From assembly GCA_040357565.1 (NCBI GenBank), contig JBDODJ010000073.1: a stretch of 57,540 bases of DNA; one strand, 5' to 3'. Shown in pieces: positions 1-56,308 of the stretch. Both the position numbers and the translations under genes were made by a program. Under the pieces are notes generated by a model. It was not told the DNA's origin, made no database searches, and saw only the letters and a program-made list of their open reading frames with translations. The DNA is from Cercozoa sp. M6MM (Eukaryota > Protista > Endomyxa: Ascetosporea). How positions within the stretch are numbered: position 1 is the stretch's first letter; the number at the start of each line of letters is the position of its first letter.

Positions 1-1009
1 CCCCCCCCCCCCCCTCGGACAGGTGCAAGAGAAGCAAGCGGCGCAGTCGTTCGACGCTGAGATCACTGCCATCGCCGAGGCCGATGCGGTACCCTTAACC
101 AATAATAAAGCACCCCCTTAACCAACGTACACGCTGCCCCTTAACTAATAAAACAGGCCGTTCAAGCCGAGTCGATCTCGTACAACCGACACACGCTGCT
201 GAACCGCAATGCCGTCGAAATCCAGCGCACCGATTACGCCGCCTTTTTGGCCGCCAAGCACGACAGCATCGCTGCCGGTAGCTGCTTTACCTCCTTGCCC
301 CCTGCCCCTGCCCCGTTTACCCCCCCCCCCCCCCGTGGGAGAGGGGGAGGCCAGNNNNNNNNNNNNNNNNNNNNNNNNNNNNNNNNNNNNNNNNNNNNNN
401 NNNNNNNNNNNNNNNNNNNNNNNNNNNNNNNNNNNNNNNNNNNNNNNNNNNNNNCCCCCCCCCCCCCTGGTAGAGATCGAGCACGCCAAGCTGCGCGGTC
501 TCACGCAGGAGCAAATGAGCGAGATCGAGGAACAGTTCGTCGAGTTCGACAAGGACAACTCCGGCTCGCTCACTGTACCCCCTCCCATCCTACCCTATTC
601 ACCTTTACCCCCCCCCCCAGGACAAGGAGTTCCGCGCGGCCTTGTACTCGATCGGCTACGACAAGAGCAAGAACGCCATCGCTGGCATCATCGAGGAATT
701 CGCCTCGGCCGGCAGCATGGATTTGGAGGCTTTCAAGAACTGGGCCATCCAGGAGATGGTACCTTTACCCCGACCTATTCCCCTTACTCCCTTTACTCTC
801 TCCCCCTTTCCCAGGGCGCGGCCGAGACCAAGCCGCAGATCACACAGGGCTTTGTCGACATCAACCGCGGCGAGTCACTCGGCGACATTGAGATCTCGGC
901 CGACATCTTCAAGGCCGACGACCTGGACTTCATCCTGTCGACGGCGCCGCAGCCTCAGGACGGCAAATACGACTACACGGCTTGGGTCGACGAGATCTTC
1001 TCGCGCTAG
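1..1009 (+). CDS. Alpha-actinin-like actin cross-linker, C-terminal part (EF-hands); 5'-truncated, multi-exon
   Basis: Spliced exons read EIEHAKLRGLTQEQMSEIEEQFVEFDKDNSGSLT|DKEFRAALYSIGY...|GAAETKPQITQGF...DGKYDYTAWVDEIFSR*. This is the EF-hand plus Ca-insensitive EF tail typical of actinins. An N gap lies at 355-454. Confidence 0.75.
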
Positions 1010-1032
1010 CTTGGCCGACCCCCCCCCCCCCC

Positions 1033-1066
<34 letters not shown>

Positions 1067-1209
1067 CGTTTACTCGACTCTAGCTGAGTCCAGCCTGCCG
1101 ACGTTTGGAGTGTACTAACTTGACCGCAGACGAGCATACGCTATGTGCAGTTCACTCTCCTGCTGCAGCACCGATCAGATGCATGATTGGGTCAGGCACT
1201 GCAAAAAGG

Positions 1210-1291
1210 AGCCTCTTGCGGGTTTCGATCCCGCTACCTACTGTACCTCGTCATTAATCGCGACGTGCTCTGTCAATTTAGCCGATGCGAC
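1210..1291 (-). pseudogene. tRNA-like sequence (degenerate tRNA or SINE head)
   Basis: Minus strand has a T-arm GCGGG-ATCGAAA-CCCGC, an anticodon arm CGTCG-CGATTAA-TGACG and a D-arm-like GCTA-AATTGACA-GAGC, followed by T5 (Pol III terminator). The acceptor stem has mismatches; the D-loop GG and U33 are absent. Confidence 0.55.
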
Positions 1292-1419
1292 GATTGTGGA
1301 TGCATTCGGTTCGGTTCTTACGTTAACTTTGATCCGATCGGACCAAGTTGATATCAATGAATGTGACTCATACGGGAAGCGAACGTCATGCATACATTGC
1401 ACTTAAAGGTATTGCTCAG

Positions 1420-2319
1420 TCAATGAAACGGCGGTGCACTGCAGGCACAGGAGCAGCACGCCCACAATGGCATTAGACGTGCCCAGACCTGCAATGAATC
1501 CAACAAGATATCACTTCGTTCCCCGTCAGTACCGATCAATAAGATACCCTGCAAAATAACTGAGCACGCGTCCGAGACAGCGTGTCGCATACACAGACAC
1601 AGCAGCAGTGTGGCACACGTGCGCATCGTCAGGGCGGCCCAGTGGATGGCAGCGTGCAGCAGTGTGCGCAACCTCAGTTGGCCAAGCTTGCCGTGCAGCA
1701 GAAAGTGCAAGGCCTCCAGCAGCGACACCAGCTGCAGTGCAGACACGACGCGAGAGGCCACCTGCGTTGTCGACAAGGACTGCATCTCGATTGGCACGGC
1801 CGGTTGGACCAGAGAGATGCAGGGTGGAATCATGAGCAGGCTGCATCAACACGCACACCTTGAGAGCTACACCTAGAGTTTAAGGCTACGTACGCAGGTG
1901 GAAGCAGGTAAAGCCCTTTGCGCACTGTTTCTGTGTATTTCCTTGTCACGTACGAGCACACGCCAACAAGCAAAAACGCGAACAACCAGGCGCTGGTGTC
2001 ACCGCTAAGCGGCAGTATTGACCACGTGGTCTATGTTTGAAGACATCCGAGTGGATACAATCTTGGACGCAAACTCAAAAACCAGTACCAATGCACGCTG
2101 CGTAAACAAAGAAAACCACCCCGAAGAGGATGAGTTGCTCAGCAGGCTTTCCAACAAATCGTGGCTCGCAACCGATCCGCGCGGAAGGAGAATCGACTCC
2201 AAAAGTGACGTTGTCGATCTCGCGACAGTACGCACATCTGCCCTCTACATGTGCGTAAATACCAGAGTGTCAACACATTGTTGTAGCACTGTCCTGTACC
2301 TCGCGCAGCAAGTAGACAT
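1420..2319 (-). CDS. Hypothetical protein (multi-exon, boundaries uncertain)
   Basis: Exon-like, Leu-rich minus-strand segments separated by GT-AG introns. No recognised domain. Confidence 0.3.
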
Positions 2320-2512
2320 ACGAGAAAAAACACGCGCAACACAACAAGGCAGCGCTTCGAATAAGGCTTGTCCACATAGTCTACACTTAGATCTCGCACT
2401 GCGCGCAGCAGTGTGCTAATACTGCTAAACCAGCCTGGCACACGATTTAAAGCGCCCCTGTAAGCGCGTGTTCCAACAGATACACAACTTTCGCTACAGC
2501 AACCAAGGAGTG

Positions 2513-5500
2513 TTAGTTGCAGCAAGACGAGTCAACAATTTGCGTCTTGATCGAGTTATTGTCTGGAGCAACGTTGGTGTCCTGCTGCTGCTGTTTGCGC
2601 AGACGCTCCTGAAACTCGCGCGCCATCTGCTCCTGGAGCTGTCGGTCCTGTCGAATCTTTTCCAGCGACACTGGCTACAATCACGCAAGTCAGCCGGTAT
2701 ACGCACACACACCACCTATACATTATTCGTACCGGTGGAAGTTTCCAAGACGCAGCGTTGCTGCCGTCTAGCACTTCTTCTGGGTCCTCGCTGTTCTGTC
2801 GGAAGGCACCTCCGAACTTGGACTGGTGGCACCTGCGTCCAGAGCATGCACATCATCGAGACTTGATCGAGAGCAAGGAAAAGCTATATGGGGGGATACA
2901 AGTGATAACTCTCAAGTCGGCCTCCTGCGTTGATCACGGCCGAGTAGGTCAGTGCTCGCACCTACATTGTCGACAAAACAGGTCAAGAAACCACGAAACA
3001 GAGTTGCTGCCGCGAACACACCTTGCGGCGGGATCGAATACGACACATGCTCTTAAATGCCGGGATTTGGAACACTAGGCAAAACAAACGTTGTGTGGTG
3101 GCATAATCGTAGTGAAATCTCGATGCGTAAGCTACGTAGGTGTCGCAACACTCGCAACACCAGCACGAGCACGAGCAGCACCAACTAAGGAAAAACCCTT
3201 CTCCTCATAGCAAGTTCATTTATCAAACAACACACCACAGGAAAAGCTGCCTGTCGCAGCACACGGTCATGCAGTGCTTGCTTTTCGAGTATTCCTGTTC
3301 CGTAACTGAACTCTTCGGCGATGGCACTTATGATGTAAGCTGCAGACCATTCGTGAGTTAGGAGCAGTTTAGTCATACAGCTGACCAATTAAGACAATAC
3401 GGGGCACGAAAAGAGGTCGCATCCAAGGCGGCAGATCCGCAAAATCCTGTGTCGGTGACAGCAGGATGTAGGGTGACCCAAGTACAAACACAGAGACGGC
3501 CATGTGCACTGTTGCTGCCCTGCAGCAACGAAGCCATACTCTGCTGCGGCTTTAGTCAAAAAGATGTCTCTGTACCAAGTAAGCAGATCGAGGAACCACT
3601 CCGACAGTCGCTCGTCGAAGCGTGGCGGAGTTGCACACAGCCGGAACAGAGCGTACTGCTTGCGTTTACATGTCAGTCTCCCTTATTGTGGAACAGGCAG
3701 ATGTACCTTGTCGCACCAGTACATGCAGGTGAACGTGCAGGCACCGAGCAGATATAGCACTGGCATGCCCACACCGCCCACAGTCAATACGATCACACAA
3801 GCTGCTGCCGTCGCCTGTGTGCACAGCATATACACTGTGTGAACAGTTTGTTAATATCGGAGCACTCACAGCAAGTCTGTCGTCGATACGAAACCGAGGA
3901 GGACGCAGTATTCTGTGTTAAAAACAACATGTATAAAAGGTATCAAACAAGCTGCATTGCAAAATGTGCACTTTACTTTCGAATTTGCTGACTTGTGCGA
4001 GCTTTTTTAATGCGCTTCTCACGCATTCTTCGTCGGAACTATGCACACAAAATACACCGGTTTAATATTCACATGAACTCTATGGGATGGTACCGGTGCC
4101 AACACGAGAGGCAATGCATGTGGGTTGACGACATTCGCAAGTGCTGTCAGCAGGATACCGGCACCCACAGCCTTGAACCTGTTCACCCGGGTAGAGTGTT
4201 TTCACCACAGGGCAAGATTGAACGAAGAGTATTCACTATACCACGCAGGCTGCGTGATGTCATCGAACTCCCCGATGTCGATGAAGCCGAGATCCGCACC
4301 CAGGAGATCACTCCACTACCCACACGATGTAAGTCAACCGTACTTTTTCTTGTTTGTTAGGCTGAGTTACATTGGTATTCACAAACACTGCCAGGAAGGC
4401 AGTGTTGACGCAGAGAGCCAAAGTCAGTTTGCGTGCCACTTGAATCATTTGTGCCGTTGCGCTGTCCTTTCTCTCCACTCGCTATGGATCGGCAGTTGAA
4501 CGAAGACAACAAATTGTGCACACATGCCACTCTGTTTCGTCAGGTACCTCAACGAGACAGCGCATCAGTGTACGCAGCGTCAGATTTACAATAATCTAGC
4601 CAATAGCCGCGCAATGAAAGCAGTGTTTAAACCCCAAGTGATTGGAATACCACAGCCAGTGCCGTCAGTGCAACGAGAACCTTGGCTCGCACGACGTCCT
4701 CCAGCCACACAGTGCACAACACCTTGTCTTTATCATCGTCCGCCATCGTCCACAGCTCTGTCACTGTGTACGCATTCGAAGGGCACTTGAACAGTGCAAA
4801 TACTAGACAAATCATTCAGTATACCTCCGATATCGGAGCAGTAACATGCGTAAATGAGCGATGTCTCTGATGCGGCACTTGCCTGTGTACACGTAGCTTG
4901 GGAGTGTATGTTTGGGGTTTAGGTGTGTGTTTGGTACCTCTTCGTATGAGGGGTACAAGCCAACGCACTCTCCATCGGCGGTGCCTGTCGACGACGACCT
5001 GAAACGCACACAGATGCTCTCAGTGCCAATCAAGACAGTTTTTTGTTGATTCTACACTGTCCTACCGAGATCGAACGATTGAAGCAGCCAACATGAGGGT
5101 GAAACTCAAAGCCATTGCAAGCGTCGACAGTGTCTTCATATGCGCGTGTTTGAGTGAATTTTTTGTTACAACAGTACAATGCAAGACGAATGATACCGCA
5201 GTAGCGCATGAACGCATACGTCGTTCAGCATGCCGGAGACGCATCCGGAGGTTATCGAAGATAACGTTACTCGGCTCGGCCGCGCGGTACAACTTCACTC
5301 GTTTTCCCAAAAACCTGTTTGGTATATCAAAGATGTAAATTTATACAGCTAACACAACTACTGAACACAGCGCCGACTGTAAAAAAACCAATAAACCGCA
5401 GGTTCTTCGGCATAAACCAACGTCGCCACGGCGTCCAAGTCCACGCAGAGTTGCGGCCCTTGTACGCACGCAAGCAACGTTGCCGAGCTCCCTACGCTCC

Positions 5501-8056
5501 AGTACAAGTACTTCCCACCTTTGATAAATTCGGCTAGAGTTCATACCTGAGATTCGAACGTGACAAAGGCTACGACAGGCGAACGCAAGTTCTTTTTTGA
5601 CCGACGCGCGCTTGGTGAAACTCTGTCGCAACAGAAAGAGCACAAATGAACTTAAAGAAGAAGGCTAAAATGTGACGATACATGACATCAAGTTCTTCCT
5701 CATCATGGAGGTAGTTTTTTCGCTCTCGCGCCAACATCACCGCTCGTTTGGCAATCTCGCTGACCAGATACATCATTTAATGGCAGAGTCATTTGTGTAG
5801 AAAACTGCGCACAGAAATACCGTTTCAGCTTCAACACTTTGCGCTTCTTCTTGAGTCGGCGCTGTGCACGTCGCTTCTCGTCCAGGTCGCTGCCAACGAA
5901 ACAACAACTGCCACAAGCATTGATTGAAAATAGTTGGTGTACTAAATATCCTTGGCCGTCTGAGCGAACTCAATGTCTTCGAGGCAGATGAGAGCAACGT
6001 CGCGAACGGTACCGAACCTGCGGTGAGCGGGATATACAACATCGGTATAAGTTTACGTATGTGAAGAGATGGGCAAAGTACTGCGTGAAGTGATTGGCAA
6101 TGTTCTCACGTGTGGTGTGCTTGCTTCGAGGCAGAGCTTGAACCTCCACAGCAAAGTTCGCAGCCTGCAAAGGAAGATTTGAGTCTGTGTTGTCATCCTT
6201 GCAAAAATCGTACAGTGACAATTTTGCGCCGAAAGTCATGAACTTCCTTCTCGTGTCGTTTTCGCATGAAGCGAATACCCAGGAACCTGGGAAGGTACAG
6301 TAAATTACTAGCAGGAGGTACTGGAATTGATTGATGCGGAGAAGTGTACAAAATGAGAGTGCTTGCGACGTCGACACACGCAACAAAGAAGGCGAAATCA
6401 GCACGACTTACTTCGCTGACTCCGGCGACATCGATGCCAAAGGGAAACTCCAGTATATCGCTTTCCAAGTTGTCGGAAGTCGTCGTGTTGAGGTAGATAG
6501 CAGACGTATTGGGCTGTGCACCCAAGTGTCCCATGCTGAAGTACTCCACGCTGAAGGTTGAGTCTGCTCGCGCCAGTCGCTGGCTTCCGTTGTTGGCGTA
6601 CATCGCCAGGATTGGCCTGCCGTATGTTTGCACGTATACGTCACCACACAACCACAGTACTTAGGTAAAGTCTACAAAAAAAGTACAGATGCACGAGAGA
6701 CAGGATAGCGAATAGCATGGCCAGATGCTGGAGTGTCGTAAAGTACCTGCGTTGAGAGTATACATTGAAATTTAATAGCACTGAGTCAGCATTGATAACT
6801 GAAGAGTACAGGTAGATGCCGAGTCCGAAACGTCGAAAACGACGAGCTGCGAACTTCCAGATTGGCTGCACAAAAAGATAGACTTCGGGGAGTGCCCTGC
6901 AATAGCGCAGTAAGAAAACGTACAAATGGTCGTCCTTTGGAGTCGTGTGGCATCTGCCGCTTTCGTCGATTGAGTGCACGTGGCAGTATCACGTTCTGCA
7001 GAGTGTCCCCTCTAACACACACACACGAACGAAAGGAAACGTTTCAACTTAAACTTGCGTATGTCAGGAAAAGTACCTCTGCAGTTGCGGTTCGTCGTCT
7101 AGCTTGTCGGGATTCACGATTTCGTTTTTGATTTCTGTGGTGACTGCCAATAGGTCGGTGACGACGTTCTTGATCGAAGAGCGGCGCCGCTCCGAGTTGA
7201 TGGGAGACACCTAAACCCAATAGATATCGATATTGTACTGTAGAAGCAGGGTCCAGGAAGCAAGGTACTTCGGTGGTGTCGACGTCGCTAATCGCCAAGC
7301 GGCTCTCGCTCAAGCCGTCGTCTTCGTCGCCATCAGTATCGGTGTCAGTGTCACCGTCTGTACCGATGCCATCGCTTTCGTCTCCTTCATCGCTGGACGC
7401 GAAATGATCCGGCATTTCCATGACTGGAGACAGTCATTGCGGAGTAGTATACATTGTCAGTACTAGTTCTATCTTGGGATACCATTGGCGTAGTCGGCAT
7501 CCTGTGTATCGACCACAGTGTCGCCGAGTTCGTCGTGATCGCTCCCTTCTTGCTGACTGTGACTCGAGTCTCTGCGATCAGCGGACTCTTCGGCACTGTC
7601 ACTGTTTCTCACTACAACGGTGGTGCCTCGCTGTACGACACCATTGGCCAGTGTTGTCTGGTCGATAAAGTCCGTGGTTTCGGTCAGCTCGTCGAACACT
7701 CGACGCTGCAACCGTCGCACGTGCTCGTTGTTCACGTTCGTACTGAGTTTAGTGACAACATCGGAACTGCTTTCGTTTTTACTTTGGCCGTCTTCTTCCT
7801 TTGGTGGCGACCTTTCTTCCTCCAACTCGGCGTCGCTGGAGGAAGAGTCAATTGCAATTCGGAGAACGTCATCCTCGTGCGCATCGCTCGGGAGGTCAGA
7901 TTTGTGATCACTTTCGTCGTCACTGCAAGAATCTTGGTCACCCGAGCGGTCACTCTGATCATCAGACTGGTTGCTAGGGTCGTTTGAGTGATTTCCCGGG
8001 TCAGCGGAATGGTCACTCATGTCACCGTCGTGGTCAACTGGACTACCGTCGCTCAT
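2513..8056 (-). CDS. Multi-pass membrane protein of the OSCA/CSC1-TMC-anoctamin superfamily, with a long acidic N-terminus
   Basis: Exons give RRFGLGIYLY|FTTLQHLAMLF, FSMGHLG, AANFAVEVQALP, RAAEPSNVIFDNL (cf. APEPxDIIWENL), GEFDDITQPAWY, GMPVLY and YWCDK|YALFRLCATPPRFD. The N-terminus is D/E/S-rich (7469-8056). The last exon ends ...VDSSCCN*. Confidence 0.7.
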
Positions 8057-49799: not shown

Positions 49800-52700
49800 T
49801 TACACGCGGTCCGGTGTCTTTTTTGTTCGGGCAGTCTTCCGATCAGGCCCAGGCACGGTTTTAGACTTACTGCCGACAGTCGATATCATCACTTTGATGT
49901 TCTCGGTTAGCGAGTGTTCTTCGTCAGGCAAAGAGCCTTCGCTGAGCGGCGATAGATCCTCATTCATCATTTCGTCGCCTTCGTCGTCGGACAGAGCCTT
50001 GAGGTTACCGCTACTGCCACGTACAGTCTTACTAGGGCGCATGGCGTTTCGTACAAACTGCGAAATCGAGTTGCGTCTTGCTAGTTTCAGCGAAGCTTCC
50101 TCTTCTAGCACTGTGAGCAAGTAATGCTACACTTAACTGTAACATGATCTTCAAAGCAATTAGCGCAATCTTACGACAGTGATCACGTCGCACTCGTGCG
50201 GACACCAACGACGCATGAAGCTCTTGTTGGGCATCTACAAAGTGCTGAGACTCTCTATTCGACGCAGAAGAGAGAAGGAAGGGAATTACGGTAGTTTTTC
50301 TTCAGTTGCGCGACTGCAAACTTGTCGATGCTTGGGCACAGTTCACCGGCGAGTTCAAAAATTGGCGATACGATGTAGCGAATGAACTGTATTTGCGACA
50401 GCGCCCGCTCTTCGTCTAGATTTGGAACGGTGTCGTCCATAAACTTCGACACTGGACGGACTGCTTCCCGTTCTCGTGCACCCTGCATGTAGAACTCGCG
50501 AGTGATGCGATTTGCCCACTTGCATGACAGGCGATCGCATTTGGCGGGGTTTCCCACGTCGGCACATTTGATGCAAAGGGCGAGCAGCAGGTCCTCATGT
50601 CCTTCGGTGAGTCGTCGATGTGGAGGCTTTGGTGCATTTAAGTCAGGTCCTAGGTGTTCTGATGCTGACGAAAAAATAGACACGGTGGACAATCGGAGTG
50701 GCGCACCGCCTGTGGTCGGGACGTGCAGCCGCTCGACTTGCAGGTCAGACCCTGGCAACGGTAGCGACTTGGCACTGTGCTGGGACTCAAGCACTGCGTT
50801 GTCGTCCGGAATCTCATGTGAGCCAGCAACGTCTATCGCTTCAACTCGTATCGTACGTGACTTGACTTCATCGATGAACTCAAAGTGTGTGCTTAGGTTC
50901 GTCGATAACACCAAGTCAATCACGCGAGCTTTGACCGCAGGGTATTTGTCTTCAGGAATCGACTCGAGAATGCACATCTTTGGGTGCCGCAGAACGGAGA
51001 AGGCAGCCAGTGCATGGTAGTTTTCGAGCACTTTGTCGTTCTTGAACAATCTAGCAATCTGATCGCACGAGCTCACCAAAAACTCGTTCGAAAGCCCAGG
51101 ATGGCGAAAGTCATGGATGACTCCTGCGAGCAGCAGACAGAAGAGGTCGAGTGCCTGAGGCTCCCAATCGGTGTCTTGTTCGAGTGCTCGCGCGAGCACA
51201 AGACTTGATTGTGCGACATCAGCAGCGTGCATAGAGTTATGATACGGGTTGCCCTTTTCATTGTACCCTGCCTCGACGGTGCGCAAAAATTCTACGCACT
51301 TGAGTTCATCGATACCGAGACGCTCGAACAAGTTGAGCCGGCTAAACAGGCAGTATCCCATGAAAAGCAGCGGCATTCCCTCTGTGTTGTCATTGAGCAT
51401 GAACAGTGAGAAGTTCCAGTCGTTGGAAAAGCGAAACAGATTGCGGGCAGCATTGAGATGCGACAGTGTCAAACGAGCGATTGGTGGCACGCTCTCACCT
51501 GTGTGTTGCCGTTCAAGGGTGTCAGGGGACGATAGATATGACAACGCCATCTCGATTTCTTGGGTTTCTGAAGCAATACTCTCGATGTCAATGACACTCG
51601 TGGCGTACCGCAGCACTTTCTGCAAACTCAGTTGCTCTTGTTTCCATGGTGTCTGCTGCAAGTCGTCGAACTCCTGTTCGAACGGAAGCACCTCGCTCAG
51701 ATCGTAAGAGAAGCCTAGGTCTTGCGTCAAAAACGCCAAGTCACTGCTTGTCATGCGCAGCGTCGACACGATTGACTGCGACAGCTTTGGTGGTCCCTCT
51801 TCAGTCACACTTCGCGAAGGTCTGCGCAACGACGAGATCTCTGTACGTAGGACAAGTGACAGATAAAGATATGTCTTTACCCTGCGATATGGATGCTTTG
51901 TGTCATTGACACGAGCGGGGCGTGTAAACTGATGGTTCTTGCAGCGGTGTCATGCACGTGGTGCATGGACAAAGTACAGCACGAGAGTAATCGCTTCCAC
52001 CAAGACCGTCGTCGCTCGATGCCGGCCTCCTCTTCGTCGAGCGTGTCTTCGTGAGCACCGAGTTGACGGTGCCGTATCGCGATTTCAGAAAACACCACGT
52101 GGTCAGGGTACACTCTAAAACAAGCAGGACGTAATATGGCTTTGGGAGCATATGAATTACAAAAAAGAAGGAAAGCTGGATTTGTATAGACATACTGCTC
52201 AAGATAGTCCGCGATGGCAGAATGCAGTTTGCGCCGCTGCTTGAACAACATCAGTTGGTAGACGCATTCGCGCATGAAGCCGTAGGTGAAGGAGTAAAAC
52301 CGATTCTCAGCTGCACCGGCAAGGTCACTGTCAGTGCGTTCGGCCGTGGCGAAGCTTCTCAACCTGATGTCATCTCGGCTGCCACTTCGAGCCATATTTC
52401 GTTTGCTCGCAGTGCTCACCACGCTAACTCCTGTCGTGTCTATGTCCGGTTGGTGGACAAGAAACGGTCGTTGCTCCGTTCGAACGAGAAATCCCAAGTC
52501 GACAAGTAACTGAGCATCGGCGGCGAGCCTTTCCCAGTTGCGGTACTTGCTAATTGGGTGAACCTCCTTCAGCATGCTCAAATCAAACGTGTTTGAGCAA
52601 AGTCCCTCCGCAACGCACATACATGAAGCCACTCGCAAAATGAATTGGTGCTGGGGCTGGATGCGGTCCAAGTGTTGTGCAGCGATTCGCCAAACTTTGA

Positions 52701-55566
52701 ACGGCACAGGAAACTCGACGATGAACTGCTGTTGCTCTAGTTCCTGCTCTAAGACCACTCCCACGGCATCCGGACTCGAGTGACTATGCATCAGCAATTC
52801 GGGACCGACCATGTGTATCACTGAGTTGCGCAAGTGGCGTCGCGACTCAGCGATCAGCGGCAGCCACGAAATGCCCGAGTTTGTGCGAAGGGTCTTGTTG
52901 AAGGCAGTACCACTTGGACCTGCTTTCGACTCTGTGATGATTTGAAGGACATACGTCGCCAAGCCGCAGTTCACTGCTTTTTCGAGTAGCAAAGGACGAC
53001 CTCCGGACATCTCGTGCAGAATTTGCGTCGCTTTGGCTGAGACGTCCTGCGTCGATGTGAGTGCTTTCACAAAGCTCTTCGAGTCCTCGGGCGAAAGGGG
53101 AGGAACGTTGAGATTCGCGACAATGGGAGCTCGTAAGATGTTCGGGTCACTACCAGGCTCGACATAGACGCACATTCTTTTGAGCTTTAAGTAGCCGATT
53201 GGCACAGCAGACCAAGGATTGGGCAGGTAAATCGGGTTGGACAGCGGTCGTGTGTTGATAATCATCGCAACGGTGTTGCTCGCAGAGATCATGTACTGCA
53301 TCGCCGGAGCCGAAGGATTCACCGACTGTCTTATGAGGGAAGTGAGATGCAACGCGAGCAGCCAGTCGATGTGAGTCATGAACTGCGCATCGTCAACTGA
53401 AAGGAGCAACGACTGCGAGTACTTTGACGTAATGCGCCCAATGACCACGAAAACCATCTTCGCCAACGCTTCAATATTTGTGGCGTCATCGACGGGGAAG
53501 GATTTGTCACCAAGTTCAAGCCAATCTTCTGCAGATGAACGACCTCGAGGGCGTCCCCTCGCCTCGGATTCTTCTGCCAGCTTGATAACAGCCTCGCGTG
53601 TTACTACCCCTTCGGGAAAAGAGGTGCCAAGAAGAAAGTTAAGCAAGTAGAGACGGTTGCGGCAGTCGGGAGCACACCGCTCAACTGCCCGGAGGATCCA
53701 CTCCTCTGGGTAACATCCGCCAAACGGACGAAAAGCGGTAAACAGTCGTTCGAACAGCATGCGAAACACTTCGAATTCGGACGGCAGGGCTTGTGTCGTC
53801 GACACACCGGAGACGGAAATTACCTTCATTGCTCGTGCACACTTTCTTTCGATCTGCTGTGACATGTGACTCTTTCCACAGCCCACATCCCCATCCAAAA
53901 GCAACACAGAGCCACTAATCGATCTCGGAAGGTCTGAGGCAAGAAGAGACAGTGTCCTTTCAAAGTCCTGTCGCACGAATCGATGTGACATGCCAGAGAT
54001 ACGCGCGGCGTGAGTGTGCGAGACGATCGAAGCCAGTGTAGAGCGGTCATACTCTTCAACTGCTGCTGTTTGCTGCCAAGCAGCGGCAGTATTGCGTTCG
54101 TTTGACCCCTGAGATATCCTTGGGCGTTCCAGCGAAGACACCATTGTCGCGAAAGCTTTGCGCGGAGCGTACACCGTGACCTTTTCCTTCTTGCCTTTCA
54201 CTGGGATAGGTTCTAGCTCTTCAAAATCAATCAGCTGAGAGGCACGAGAGGTCTTTGACGAAACGACATTTTGCGTGGCTCTGTTGCACAAAATCTTGTA
54301 CTTGTCTGACCTCATTGCAGCCTGCATCAAACGTGCCGATAGGTTCACTGTGTCGCCAAGCACAGTGTATTCGCGACGTGTAGATGTCCCGACAAGCGAA
54401 CAAAGTACGAAGCCGCTGGTGATGCCGATCGCAGAGGGGACTCCAACTCGCCTCAACATTGCTTCAAGCTCGATTGCCGCGAGAGTTGCACGTGCAGCGT
54501 CGGCGAAGTCAGAGTGCGCGAGAGGAGCCAAGCCAAAGACAGCAAGGATGATTGAACCTTTGTCGTCCACATTGAACTTGTTTAGAGAGCCTTCAAACTT
54601 GTAGATAGCCTGCTGAATCATCGACGTCACCATCTGCACCTCTTGCATCGCCTCCTCGGTCACCACTTCACACTTATGCAGGTTGCACTTGAACTGGATG
54701 TTGATGAACATTATCGTGATGTTGCGAAGCTCGGCGGCCCAAATGTTCTGATTAACTGCAAAGTACGGCACAACCGCTGCCGGGATGTACTGCTGCATGG
54801 TGCTTCGGAAGTTCTGCATGTGCGCATTTTTCATGAATGCCTTGCCAATACCAGCTTGCTTGACTCGCTTCAGACACGCTTTGATGCGAAAAAAACCGGG
54901 ATGCTCAGGAACTTCTTCGGCTTCGAAGTGATCTTCGATGCGACGGTATGCTTCTTCAGAAAGGACGACATCCCCCGCGTGGCAGGCTGCTTCGGCGGCG
55001 TACGCTTGGTTCAAAGGTTTGCCACATGCCAGGTACTCGACTCGTTTGTACTCGCCCCCGACGTGCAGAATGATCGCAGTACCAACACCGATCCCAAGTT
55101 TGACACTGAGGAACACCTCTTTCGCCAACTCTGCGTTGTGCATCTCTTCCTGGATTCCGAGACAGCACTGAGTCGCTCCATGTAGCATGTAAGCGAGGTC
55201 CTTCGCAGTCGGTCGCGCCTTTGGCGGAGGCCACAGGATCAACATCGCGTCTCCAGCAAACTTAAAGACGTCCCCTCCTCCAGCACCGACGTATCGCACC
55301 AACCTCTCAAGGTATCGATTCAAGTAAAACCCAAGCAACTCAATCCCTTCGGGACCTCGTGCTTGCAACGACTCCGACAGCTTTGTGAAGCCTGAGACAT
55401 CCGCAAAGAGAGCGACTGTCGTAACCTCTTGCATTTCCGGCACAAAGGGTTCATCGTCAGGCAAGCCTTCAGGCCTGTCAAGGATGTGTTGCTTTATGAC
55501 GACGGGCAGCAGCGACGCCATGCGCTTTGACATCGCGGCATCTTCTTCGATGCTCACTGATTTCAT
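49800..55566 (-). CDS. Soluble-type adenylyl cyclase (C1+C2) - P-loop/STAND NTPase - class I cyclic nucleotide phosphodiesterase, predicted as one fused gene (ends may extend by extra exons, e.g. to 49606)
   Basis: Cyclase: LFADVSGFT, KFAGDA, NKFNVDDKG, REYTVLGDTVNLSARLM. Walker A GDVGCGKS; Walker B LSVDDAQF. PDE: NPYHNSMHAADV, IHDFRHPG, LENYH, IKCADVGNP, EFYMQG, SQIQFI. Introns 52115-52195 (81 nt) and 51822-51880 (59 nt) join the two long ORFs in frame. Confidence 0.8.
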
Positions 55567-56308
55567 TCTTTCGTACCACACTGCCCCACACCCGGTGTTC
55601 TTGGAGCCGACGGCGAAGCTATGCTCAGGTAAACGTCACGAAGATTTGGTCGAGAGGTGCGGCGACCAATTGCCGCCCCCTGGGAAGCGAATGAAAACAG
55701 AAAATGAGCTTCAATTTTGCACGACAACAGAATGAACAAGATAGGATACCCACAGTTGGAAGTTGCAGTTTATTCCTTGCTTCTACGAAGGTACAGCGCT
55801 ATCACAGTGACCAGAGTCCTATCAGATGTCAAGACGTGACTTCCGCGCTGAAGCGAAACTGATTCAATTCTGTTGCACGCTCGTGGCAACTTGCGCCGGG
55901 GCTTCTTGAAGCTCACTGCTTAGACAAGAGACCTGACGAAGCGGTAAACAGCGTTGCTACGTTGATCGTTCCAGTTTTCGACGGCAGCCAAAACCTTAAA
56001 TGGCGCTGAATCGAGTTTCGAGTTATAACACAAACCTCGCGTTCTTGGCGCTTGGATGGTACCAACCTTCCCCGCGACAAGTCGTGTGTTCGTGAGTGAG
56101 TGAGGTGCTTAGTGGTCTTGGTTTCTACGTCGGCGGAAACTATCACAACTGGCTGCCGTCGTCGATGAAACCAGCATTCGCATACCCGGTGCAAGAATGT
56201 AACTGAAAATCATTCATTCTCTTGTTCAATAACGGAACACAACGACTTTTGGTTTCGCTTTAGTTCACAAACGAAAAGCGTACACGCCTCCTCATCCCGA
56301 CAAGCAAA

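What the first reader, a model, noticed from the sequence alone, without database searches (positions are those of the whole stretch)
49800..55581. Predicted bifunctional cAMP enzyme: soluble-type adenylyl cyclase + NTPase fused to a phosphodiesterase
Seen: the 1234-aa cyclase ORF stops inside a GT donor (…GCA GG|GTAAAG at 51880). A 59-nt intron ending TTGCGCAG at 51822 is the typical size and acceptor type for this genome and joins it in frame to the PDE ORF (…IHIAG-PSRSVTEEG…). The PDE ORF starts only ~50 bp downstream, leaving almost no room for its own promoter. Both catalytic sets look intact. Cyclase: metal Asp residues (ADVS, AGDA), ATP-specifying Lys/Thr (NKF, EYTV) and N/R (VNLSAR). 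PDE: YHN..H, HD, CAD and the invariant Gln (SQIQFI); the usual TD motif reads TN. Known: ADCY10/sAC normally continues after the NTPase with helical/TPR-like regions, not a PDE, and plant CAPE proteins have the opposite order (PDE then AC) with no sAC NTPase module. The bicarbonate Lys (KFAGD) is kept, but by eye the position of human R176 appears to be Tyr. Inference: one polypeptide that both makes and degrades cAMP, possibly switched by the NTPase, producing local cAMP pulses.
Basis: partly seen in the sequence, partly recalled or inferred. Interest (0 to 1): 0.85.

Follow-up and report, generated by a model that had tools for sequence, protein, structure and literature searches.

The report
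Fused cAMP cyclase–NTPase–phosphodiesterase gene
A marine amoeba gene most likely encodes one long protein that carries both the enzyme that makes cAMP and the enzyme that destroys it, and it belongs to a widespread, apparently undescribed protist family; the exact splice that joins the two halves is still unproven.

Summary
A 1234-codon ORF carries two class III cyclase domains whose best solved match is human sAC. It ends in TAA at 51879-51877, and a 524-codon PDEase_I ORF starts 47 nt downstream.

The window comes from Cercozoa sp. M6MM (Lemnamoeba sinaloensis). GenBank already annotates the two halves as one 1713-aa "hypothetical protein" (MHM6MM_002917).

No reads could be obtained, so support for the fusion is comparative:
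- 16 of the 150 closest sAC-like cluster representatives carry a C-terminal PDE.
- The two nearest cyclase relatives also carry the nearest PDE domains.
- One metagenome contig encodes cyclase-NTPase-PDE in a single uninterrupted 2442-aa ORF.
- The middle module folds as a STAND/AAA+ NTPase.

All cyclase and PDE metal and catalytic residues are kept. The sAC bicarbonate Arg is Tyr/Phe family-wide. The PDE "TD" Asp is Asn/Ser/Ala across most of the window's clade.

Verdict: a real fused gene (about 0.8) and a new variant of known cyclase-PDE fusions (CAPE, diatom GC/PDE). Other first-stage notes (s1-798456, s1-799883) cover this same stretch.

The parts
52196..55566 (-). Exon 1 of the public model, from ATG 55566: cyclase C1+C2, NTPase and helical domain (P0001 residues 1-1124)
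   Evidence: P0001 maps exactly to 55566..52195/6
54901..55446 (-). Cyclase C1 domain, with metal Asp residues (FADVSGFT, KFAGDA)
54157..54804 (-). Cyclase C2 domain (NKF Lys, EYTV Thr, VNLSAR Asn/Arg)
53869..53892 (-). Walker A motif GDVGCGKS of the NTPase module
   Evidence: the fold of residues 481-1123 matches Cdc6/ORC, MalT, Avs3 and CED-4
53386..53412 (-). Walker B-like motif SLLLSVDDA
   Evidence: aligned to CFDQA / IIDEG of the homologues; consensus IDxA
52115..52195 (-). In-frame, stop-free 81-nt intron of the public model (GTATGT..TTTTAG) inside the long ORF
   Evidence: removing it restores collinearity with P0071; GC 0.35-0.40
51877..51879 (-). TAA stop that ends the cyclase ORF
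51822..51880 (-).
   Evidence: It is the only in-frame candidate of typical length (50-95 nt) that has both a GTA donor and a YAG acceptor
51841..51929 (-). Intron of the public model: 89 nt, GTTTAC..TACAG, in frame. The donor has T at position +3
   Evidence: no GTT donor among about 23 sampled introns
50258..51821 (-). PDE exon (starts at 51840 in the public model): about 190-aa linker followed by the PDE catalytic domain
50318..51244 (-). PDEase_I catalytic domain with a roughly 90-aa insert. H-N-x-x-H, HD, E..H, CAD and Gln are all present
50897..50902 (-). Thr-Asn in place of the usual PDE Thr-Asp
   Evidence: N/S/A in 10 of the 11 fused members of the window's clade
50111..50289 (-). Possible 179-nt intron (GTAATT..CACAG). 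Unverified and absent from the public model, which stops at TAG 50257-50255
49803..50110 (-). Possible extra C-terminal exon (about 103 aa, acidic, low complexity). Codon-usage score is similar to the two long ORFs
   Evidence: no Pfam match

Best explanation
This is one minus-strand gene of Lemnamoeba sinaloensis M6MM (GenBank MHM6MM_002917). It encodes a protein of about 1,700-1,850 aa with this order of parts: (1) an sAC-type tandem C1-C2 class III adenylyl cyclase, (2) a P-loop STAND/AAA+-like NTPase with helical and winged-helix parts, (3) a poorly conserved linker, and (4) a class I cyclic-nucleotide phosphodiesterase. A short intron removes the TAA between the two long ORFs.

The gene belongs to an unnamed but widespread, eukaryote-like family of cyclase-NTPase-PDE fusions.

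Inferred mechanism (not shown): the cyclase makes cAMP and the tethered PDE hydrolyses it, so the protein acts as a self-limiting, spatially confined cAMP source. The nucleotide state or oligomerisation of the central STAND module probably sets the balance of synthesis and hydrolysis. It is unlikely to be bicarbonate-gated like mammalian sAC, because the Arg176 equivalent is missing.
For: Domains and organism:
- Two cyclase stretches and a PDEase_I domain match Pfam.
- The best solved matches are human ADCY10 for both C1 and C2 (7e-34), and PDE4/8/1/7 for the PDE.
- The public model joins the halves into one 1713-aa protein. That annotation pipeline used RNA-seq (PMC11069148, PMC13746701).

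Comparative evidence:
- An exhaustive HMMER search with the cyclase ORF, followed by a local PDE scan, found a C-terminal PDE in 16 of the 150 closest cluster representatives.
- P0071 and P0072 are collinear with the window protein across cyclase, NTPase, helical region and PDE.
- They are the nearest relatives of both the cyclase and the PDE half (PDE 214 and 197 bits, against 182 bits for the best PDE-only protein found).
- On the cyclase-domain tree the window protein sits in a 96% SH-aLRT clade of 14 rows, 11 of them fused. The fused label is clustered (8 changes against 17.5 in shuffles, 0 of 500 shuffles as low).
- Contig L016 holds cyclase x2, AAA_16, PH, C2, GYF and PDEase_I in one uninterrupted ORF at 62..7390.

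NTPase module:
- The AlphaFold model has pTM 0.74, and Foldseek matches Cdc6/ORC, MalT, Avs3, CED-4 and a STAND-TPR protein.
- The closest homologue passes the AAA_16 cut-off.

Catalytic residues and pathway context:
- All catalytic and metal residues are conserved family-wide.
- The genome encodes many cNMP-binding domains, so effectors are available.
Against:
- The junction is ambiguous, and in-frame GT..AG pairs are expected by chance.
- The genome is very compact (median intergenic distance 162-176 bp) and the PDE ORF has its own ATG at 51754, so a tandem gene pair is physically possible.
- Pfam AAA_16 is below threshold in the window protein itself (E 0.003).
- The PDE 'TD' Asp is Asn, and the effect on activity is unknown.
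- The PDE-only comparison set was limited by length filters, so closer stand-alone PDEs of 455-942 aa may exist.
- No enzymatic activity has been measured for any member of this family.
Confidence: 0.8

Rival explanations
1. Gene fission. An ancestral fusion has split in this lineage into two adjacent same-strand genes: a cyclase-NTPase that ends at TAA 51877, and a PDE that starts at ATG 51754. They are transcribed or translated separately.
For: - There is a real in-frame stop.
- The PDE ORF has an ATG 123 nt downstream of that stop.
- The genome tolerates very short intergenic spacers (PMC13746701).
- In-frame splice solutions arise by chance.
- The lowest-GC core, 51880..51841, is bounded by GT..AG but is out of frame.
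Against: - The public RNA-informed model fuses the two halves.
- All nearest relatives of both halves are fused.
- A 40-nt intron is shorter than any of about 23 introns sampled in this genome, which range 53-87 nt.
- The best consensus splice pair in the region is in frame.
Confidence: 0.12
2. The gene is fused, but one half is not a working enzyme. In particular, the PDE domain (TD changed to TN, with a 90-aa insert) could act as a cAMP-binding feedback sensor rather than a hydrolase.
For: - The Asp of the near-universal PDE 'TD' motif is N, S or A in 10 of the 11 fused members of the window's clade.
- There is a large insert between the TD helix and the CAD motif.
- In one relative, P0131, the cyclase C1 residues are degenerate, so half-dead fusions do occur.
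Against: - His/His/Asp/Asp metal ligands, the acid His, Glu, Thr and Gln are invariant or kept.
- The PDEase_I score is 184 bits.
- In the CAPE precedent both halves are active (PMC5159850).
Confidence: 0.15
3. Assembly indel. The two ORFs are really one continuous ORF, and a 1-nt error in the short-read assembly created the stop. The PDE frame is already open from 51949, so it overlaps the cyclase ORF by about 70 nt.
For: The open frames overlap between 51949 and 51880. The draft is a short-read assembly (PMC13746701).
Against: - There is no long homopolymer in the overlap.
- A GC dip typical of introns lies exactly at the junction.
- Illumina indels are rare.
- The annotators modelled an intron here.
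Confidence: 0.03

Closest known systems
Mammalian soluble adenylyl cyclase ADCY10 (sAC)
   Same: - Tandem C1-C2 class III domains in one chain; it is the best solved-structure match for both domains.
- Equivalents of metal Asp47/Asp99, Lys334, Thr405, Asn412 and Arg416 are kept, and so is Lys95.
- The cyclase is followed by a P-loop NTPase-like and helical region.
   Different: - The bicarbonate-binding Arg176 is Tyr here, and Phe or Tyr in every fused relative.
- The protein ends in a class I PDE, which sAC lacks.
- Sequence identity is modest.
CAPE (COMBINED AC with PDE) of Marchantia and other streptophytes with motile sperm
   Same: A class III cyclase and a class I PDE sit on one polypeptide. 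Both activities have been shown in vitro, and the protein has a role in sperm motility (PMC5159850, PMC8115329, PMC11032487).
   Different: - The order is reversed (PDE at the N-terminus, AC at the C-terminus).
- It is described as having one AC catalytic domain at the C-terminus rather than a C1-C2 tandem.
- No NTPase module is described for it.
- It occurs in a different lineage, so it is probably an independent fusion.
[quoted passage not shown]
   Same: A cyclase and a PDE are fused in a protist protein, and the genes are induced by sex pheromone (PMC8027222).
   Different: - It is described as a membrane protein with an extracellular stretch, and as a cGMP enzyme.
- No sAC-type tandem cyclase or STAND NTPase is described for it.
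Oomycete FYVE/PH adenylate cyclases and bacterial cyclase-AAA_16-TPR proteins
   Same: They share the same sAC-like cyclase plus AAA_16 core. Oomycete proteins P0002, P0004 and P0005 fall in the same 100%-supported eukaryote-like cyclase clade.
   Different: They carry FYVE/PH or TPR modules after the NTPase and have no PDE.
Bacterial GGDEF-EAL proteins
   Same: The logic is the same: the synthase and the hydrolase of one second messenger are on one chain, and they are often reciprocally regulated (established knowledge).
   Different: The folds are unrelated and the messenger is different (c-di-GMP). This is an analogy only.

Membership tests
sAC-type (ADCY10-like) class III adenylyl cyclase | Two class III catalytic domains (C1, C2) in tandem on one chain | tested here: met
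   Pfam PF00211 matches in 2 stretches. ADCY10 chains match both domains at 7e-34. Both domains are also found in the genome scan.
sAC-type (ADCY10-like) class III adenylyl cyclase | Catalytic set: two metal Asp residues in C1; Lys and Thr (ATP specificity), Asn and Arg in C2 | tested here: met
   Residue-by-residue alignment to 4oya and the family alignment.
sAC-type (ADCY10-like) class III adenylyl cyclase | Bicarbonate site: Lys95 plus Arg176 | tested here: not met
   The Lys is kept, but the Arg176 position is Tyr here and Phe or Tyr in all 19 fused proteins.
sAC-type (ADCY10-like) class III adenylyl cyclase | P-loop NTPase (AAA_16/STAND-like) module after the cyclase | tested here: met
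   - Walker A and Walker B motifs are present.
- Pfam AAA_16 is only E 0.003 in the window protein, but reaches 36 bits against a 32.6-bit cut-off in the closest homologue P0071.
- The predicted fold matches Cdc6/ORC, MalT, Avs3 and CED-4 at E 3e-5 to 1e-3, with low TM-scores of 0.25-0.5.
Class I cyclic-nucleotide phosphodiesterase (PDEase_I, HD superfamily) | Pfam PF00233 above the gathering score, with a complete domain | tested here: met
   184.5 bits against a 24.8-bit cut-off, covering profile positions 1-234 of 238.
Class I cyclic-nucleotide phosphodiesterase (PDEase_I, HD superfamily) | Metal ligands and acid His (H-N-x-x-H, HD, D of the CAD motif), Glu, and the substrate-clamping Gln | tested here: met
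   Aligned to PDE4A. Apart from the clamp Gln, these residues are invariant in the 19-protein family alignment. The Gln is kept in the window protein and its clade but is Ser or Gly in the TD-retaining subgroup.
Class I cyclic-nucleotide phosphodiesterase (PDEase_I, HD superfamily) | Asp of the conserved 'TD' motif | tested here: not met
   It is Asn here. In the window's clade it is N, S or A (Asp only in P0131); in the second fused subgroup it is Asp. The functional effect is unknown.
Cyclase-NTPase-PDE fusion family (unnamed; P0071, P0072, L016 and others) | Collinear cyclase, NTPase, helical region and PDE on one polypeptide | tested here: inconclusive
   This is met in the relatives: L016 has a single ORF, and the alignments are collinear. 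In the window it depends on an intron that no reads could confirm. The public model does fuse the halves.
CAPE | PDE N-terminal to a single C-terminal AC domain | tested here: not met
   The order here is AC(C1-C2), NTPase, PDE. The CAPE architecture is taken from PMC5159850.
Diatom GC/PDE | Membrane topology with an extracellular stretch, and guanylate specificity | not tested
   No transmembrane prediction or sequence comparison was run. Lys/Thr specificity residues argue for ATP as substrate.

The most novel reading that the evidence does not exclude
The sAC-type cyclase-STAND NTPase-PDE protein is a self-contained cAMP pulse or micro-domain generator. Ligand- or nucleotide-driven switching of the central STAND module would reciprocally gate synthesis and hydrolysis. 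This device would be an ancient one, conserved across several protist lineages (at least 16 sequence clusters), and has never been described or assayed.
Probability: 0.3. Interest if true: 0.75.

Novelty: new variant of a known kind. Interest (0 to 1): 0.55.

Why it matters
How cells confine cAMP signals in space and time is usually explained by scaffolds that bring separate cyclases and PDEs together. Here the two enzymes are joined covalently, with a STAND-type switch between them, and the arrangement recurs in many uncultured eukaryote-like sequences. That makes it a natural minimal system for testing how tethered synthesis and degradation shape a second-messenger signal. It would also be a second or third independent invention of cyclase-PDE fusion, after CAPE and the diatom GC/PDE. 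Finally, it shows that the sAC lineage in protists has been wired to inputs other than bicarbonate.

Tried and rejected
- **Transcript fragments:** the last homologous-protein search used the first 260 aa of the PDE ORF, in the hope of finding transcript-derived fragments across the junction. It returned only two unrelated short PDEs. P0001's 90% cluster has one member.
- **De novo exon finding by hexamer or codon usage:** too weak to use. It overfitted, and this genome has little codon bias.
- **Homology across the junction:** the linker is not conserved in P0071 or P0072, so homology cannot choose between the splice models.
- **Paralogues:** the other sAC-like cyclase (contig C26) and about 5 other PDE loci are not adjacent to each other. 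There is no second fused copy to compare.
- **Literature:** I found CAPE and the diatom GC/PDE, but nothing on sAC-type cyclase-NTPase-PDE fusions. One search failed on syntax.
- **Joined model:** Exons were searched separately by reference, and the only joined sequence I used was the public protein P0001.
- **40-nt GT..AG core (51880..51841):** rejected as the main intron because it is out of frame and shorter than every sampled intron.
Full report
**What is in the sequence**

The feature lies on the minus strand.
- ORF A (55581..51877, first ATG at 55566) encodes 1234 codons.
- ORF B (51829..50255) encodes 524 codons.
- ORF A ends ...ATC GCA GGG TAA, and the G GTAAAG overlapping the stop starts at 51880. 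ORF B's frame is already open from 51949.
- Pfam finds Guanylate_cyc in ORF A in two stretches (2e-19) and a complete PDEase_I in ORF B (3e-54, 184 bits).

**Organism and public annotation**

A protein search returned MAG protein MHM6MM_002917 of Cercozoa sp. M6MM (P0001, 1713 aa, Pfam PF00211+PF00233). It sits on a 57,540-nt contig, which is this window. M6MM is a marine amoeba of the Apofilosa (Rhizaria), now named Lemnamoeba sinaloensis (PMC11069148, PMC13746701). It was annotated with Funannotate using RNA-seq.

Mapping P0001 back to the window gives three exons: 55566..52196, 52114..51930 and 51840..50258. So the fusion is already in GenBank as a "hypothetical protein".
- It has an in-frame, stop-free 81-nt intron at 52195..52115 (GTATGT..TTTTAG).
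- Its junction intron is 51929..51841 (89 nt, GTTTAC..TACAG).
- It stops at TAG 50257-50255.

The 81-nt intron is credible. It coincides with a GC dip, and removing it restores collinearity with homologue P0071.

**Is the fusion real?**

No transcript-derived protein fragments were found. The case therefore rests on comparison with relatives.

1. An exhaustive HMMER search of 1.84 billion cluster representatives with ORF A residues 1-1200 listed the 150 closest sAC-like proteins. A local phmmer scan with ORF B found a C-terminal PDE in 16 of them.
2. The closest cyclase relatives are P0071 (51% identity over the cyclase) and P0072. Both are collinear with the window protein through cyclase, NTPase, helical region and PDE.
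3. The same two proteins carry the best PDE matches (214 and 197 bits). The best PDE-only protein found scores 182 bits. The PDE-only set was limited by length filters, so this comparison is not exhaustive.
4. On a cyclase-domain tree, the window protein lies in a 96% SH-aLRT clade of 14 rows, 11 of them fused. The fused state is strongly clustered (8 changes against 17.5 in shuffles; 0 of 500 shuffles as low).
5. At the DNA level, metagenome contig L016 (7746 nt) holds one uninterrupted ORF at 62..7390 (2442 aa). It contains Guanylate_cyc x2, AAA_16, PH, C2, GYF and PDEase_I.

The architecture is therefore real and inherited in the clade where this cyclase sits. Two adjacent ORFs in the same order, separated by 47 nt, are most simply one gene.

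**Which intron?**

An in-frame solution is not evidence in itself. There are 37 in-frame, stop-free GT..AG pairs of 30-200 nt here, 8 of them 50-95 nt long.

I sampled this genome's introns by two methods:
- spliced alignment of cyclase and PDE paralogues;
- exon-by-exon Pkinase matches, for which I fetched the junctions.

The sample shows:
- Lengths cluster at about 53-87 nt, and none is near 40 nt. The published mean is 82 nt.
- Donors are GTA in about 19 of 23 introns, GTG in 3, GTC in 1 and GTT in 0.
- Acceptors are CAG or TAG.

The annotated donor, GTTTAC, is atypical at position +3. It may nevertheless reflect RNA evidence that I cannot see.

The low-GC core 51880..51841 (40 nt) is out of frame and shorter than any sampled intron.

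My rough odds are:

| Junction | Odds |
|---|---|
| Annotated, 51929..51841 | 40% |
| Another junction, or both used | 15% |

It is absent from the public model and is not conserved in relatives.

**Domains and residues**

*Cyclase.* Alignment to human ADCY10 shows that the equivalents of Asp47, Lys95, Asp99, Lys334, Thr405, Asn412 and Arg416 are kept. The bicarbonate-binding Arg176 is Tyr. In all 19 fused proteins this position is Phe or Tyr. Bicarbonate gating of the sAC kind is therefore unlikely.

*NTPase.* Walker A (GDVGCGKS) and a Walker B-like motif (LLLSVDD) are present and conserved. Pfam AAA_16 is below threshold here (E 0.003) but above the cut-off in P0071. An AlphaFold model of residues 481-1123 has pTM 0.74, with 297 residues at pLDDT 90 or higher. 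It matches Cdc6/ORC, MalT, Avs3, CED-4, an NLR and a STAND-TPR protein (E 3e-5 to 2e-3, modest TM-scores). This is an AAA+/STAND-class switch module.

*PDE.* The closest solved structures are PDE4, PDE8, PDE1 and PDE7. H-N-x-x-H, HD, E..H, the Thr of the TD motif and the Asp of CAD are invariant across the fusion family. The clamp Gln is kept in the window's clade but is Ser or Gly in the second subgroup. The Asn in ADVGNP aligns with the PDE4 Asn of ADLSNP. From my own knowledge of PDE families, that residue contacts adenine, so I infer a preference for cAMP.

The Asp of "TD" is Asn here. It is N, S or A in 10 of the 11 fused members of the window's clade (P0131 keeps Asp), and Asp in a second fused subgroup that also carries PH and C2 domains. 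This is a lineage trait, not decay of this one gene. Its catalytic effect is unknown. A roughly 90-aa insert separates the TD helix from the CAD motif.

**Genomic context**

The genome has only a handful of cyclase loci and about six PDE loci. None of the others are adjacent to each other. It has many cNMP-binding domains, including some next to a kinase on contig C373. Cyclic-nucleotide effectors are therefore available.

**Mechanism**

- Shown: the domain order, the intact catalytic residues and the conservation of the fusion.
- Inferred: both halves are active, as in CAPE (PMC5159850). The protein makes cAMP that its own PDE removes, which confines the signal. The STAND module's nucleotide state or oligomerisation sets the balance.
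- Not testable here: activities, regulation and localisation.

**Comparison with what is known**

Cyclase+PDE fusions are known in two forms:
- CAPE in streptophytes, with PDE then AC and both activities shown (PMC5159850, PMC8115329, PMC11032487);
- membrane GC/PDE in diatoms (PMC8027222).

I found no paper describing an sAC-type tandem cyclase plus STAND NTPase plus C-terminal PDE. I therefore class it as a new variant of a known kind. It is already present in databases without a name.

**Procedural notes**

Exons were searched by reference, and the only joined protein used was the public P0001. Other first-stage notes (s1-798456, s1-799883) cover this same stretch.

Noticed in passing
window 52115-52195 (-): The public model places an in-frame, stop-free 81-nt intron (GTATGT..TTTTAG, T-rich, GC 0.35-0.40) inside what looks like one continuous 1234-codon ORF. 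The 'intron-poor island' therefore probably has at least two introns.
   Followed up: partly
G000:C26:100954-102425 (+) (L004/L006): A second sAC-like tandem cyclase gene, interrupted by introns of 83 and 73 nt (GTAGGA.., GTAGTT..). No PDE match was found on that contig.
   Followed up: partly
About 23 introns sampled on other contigs (L004, L011, L095-L112): Donor position +3 is A in about 19 of 23 sampled introns, G in 3, C in 1 and T in none. Lengths are about 53-87 nt. Donors are therefore not 'consensus-free' at +3, as earlier first-stage notes suggested.
   Followed up: partly
L097 (G000:C15:17004-17057) and L111 (G000:C57): Some kinase-gene introns consist largely of CCCTTAA-like (telomere-like) repeats or long C runs. 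This matches another first-stage note about C(n)TTA-filled introns.
   Followed up: no
L016:62-7390 (+): In this environmental relative, PH, C2 and GYF domains lie between the NTPase and the PDE. Its PDE keeps the TD Asp, and (inferred from its PH/C2 architecture, shared with P0060; L016 itself was not in the alignment) it probably has Ser or Gly at the usual clamp-Gln column, like the second fused subgroup. That subgroup may have different substrate handling.
   Followed up: no
P0131 (fused relative): The C1 metal-binding motifs are degenerate (FADVSGF becomes QIKIVGF; AGDA becomes ASHE) while the PDE stays intact. This is a possible cyclase-dead member of the family.
   Followed up: no
G000:C373:10417-12545 (+): Three cNMP-binding domains lie directly upstream of a protein kinase domain on the same strand. 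This is a PKA/PKG-like fused effector that could read the cAMP made by the gene studied here.
   Followed up: no
window 49803-50110 (-): An acidic, Ser-rich 103-aa ORF lies just downstream of the PDE stop. Its codon usage is similar to that of the cyclase and PDE ORFs. It is either a last exon missed by the public model or a separate small gene or UTR.
   Followed up: partly
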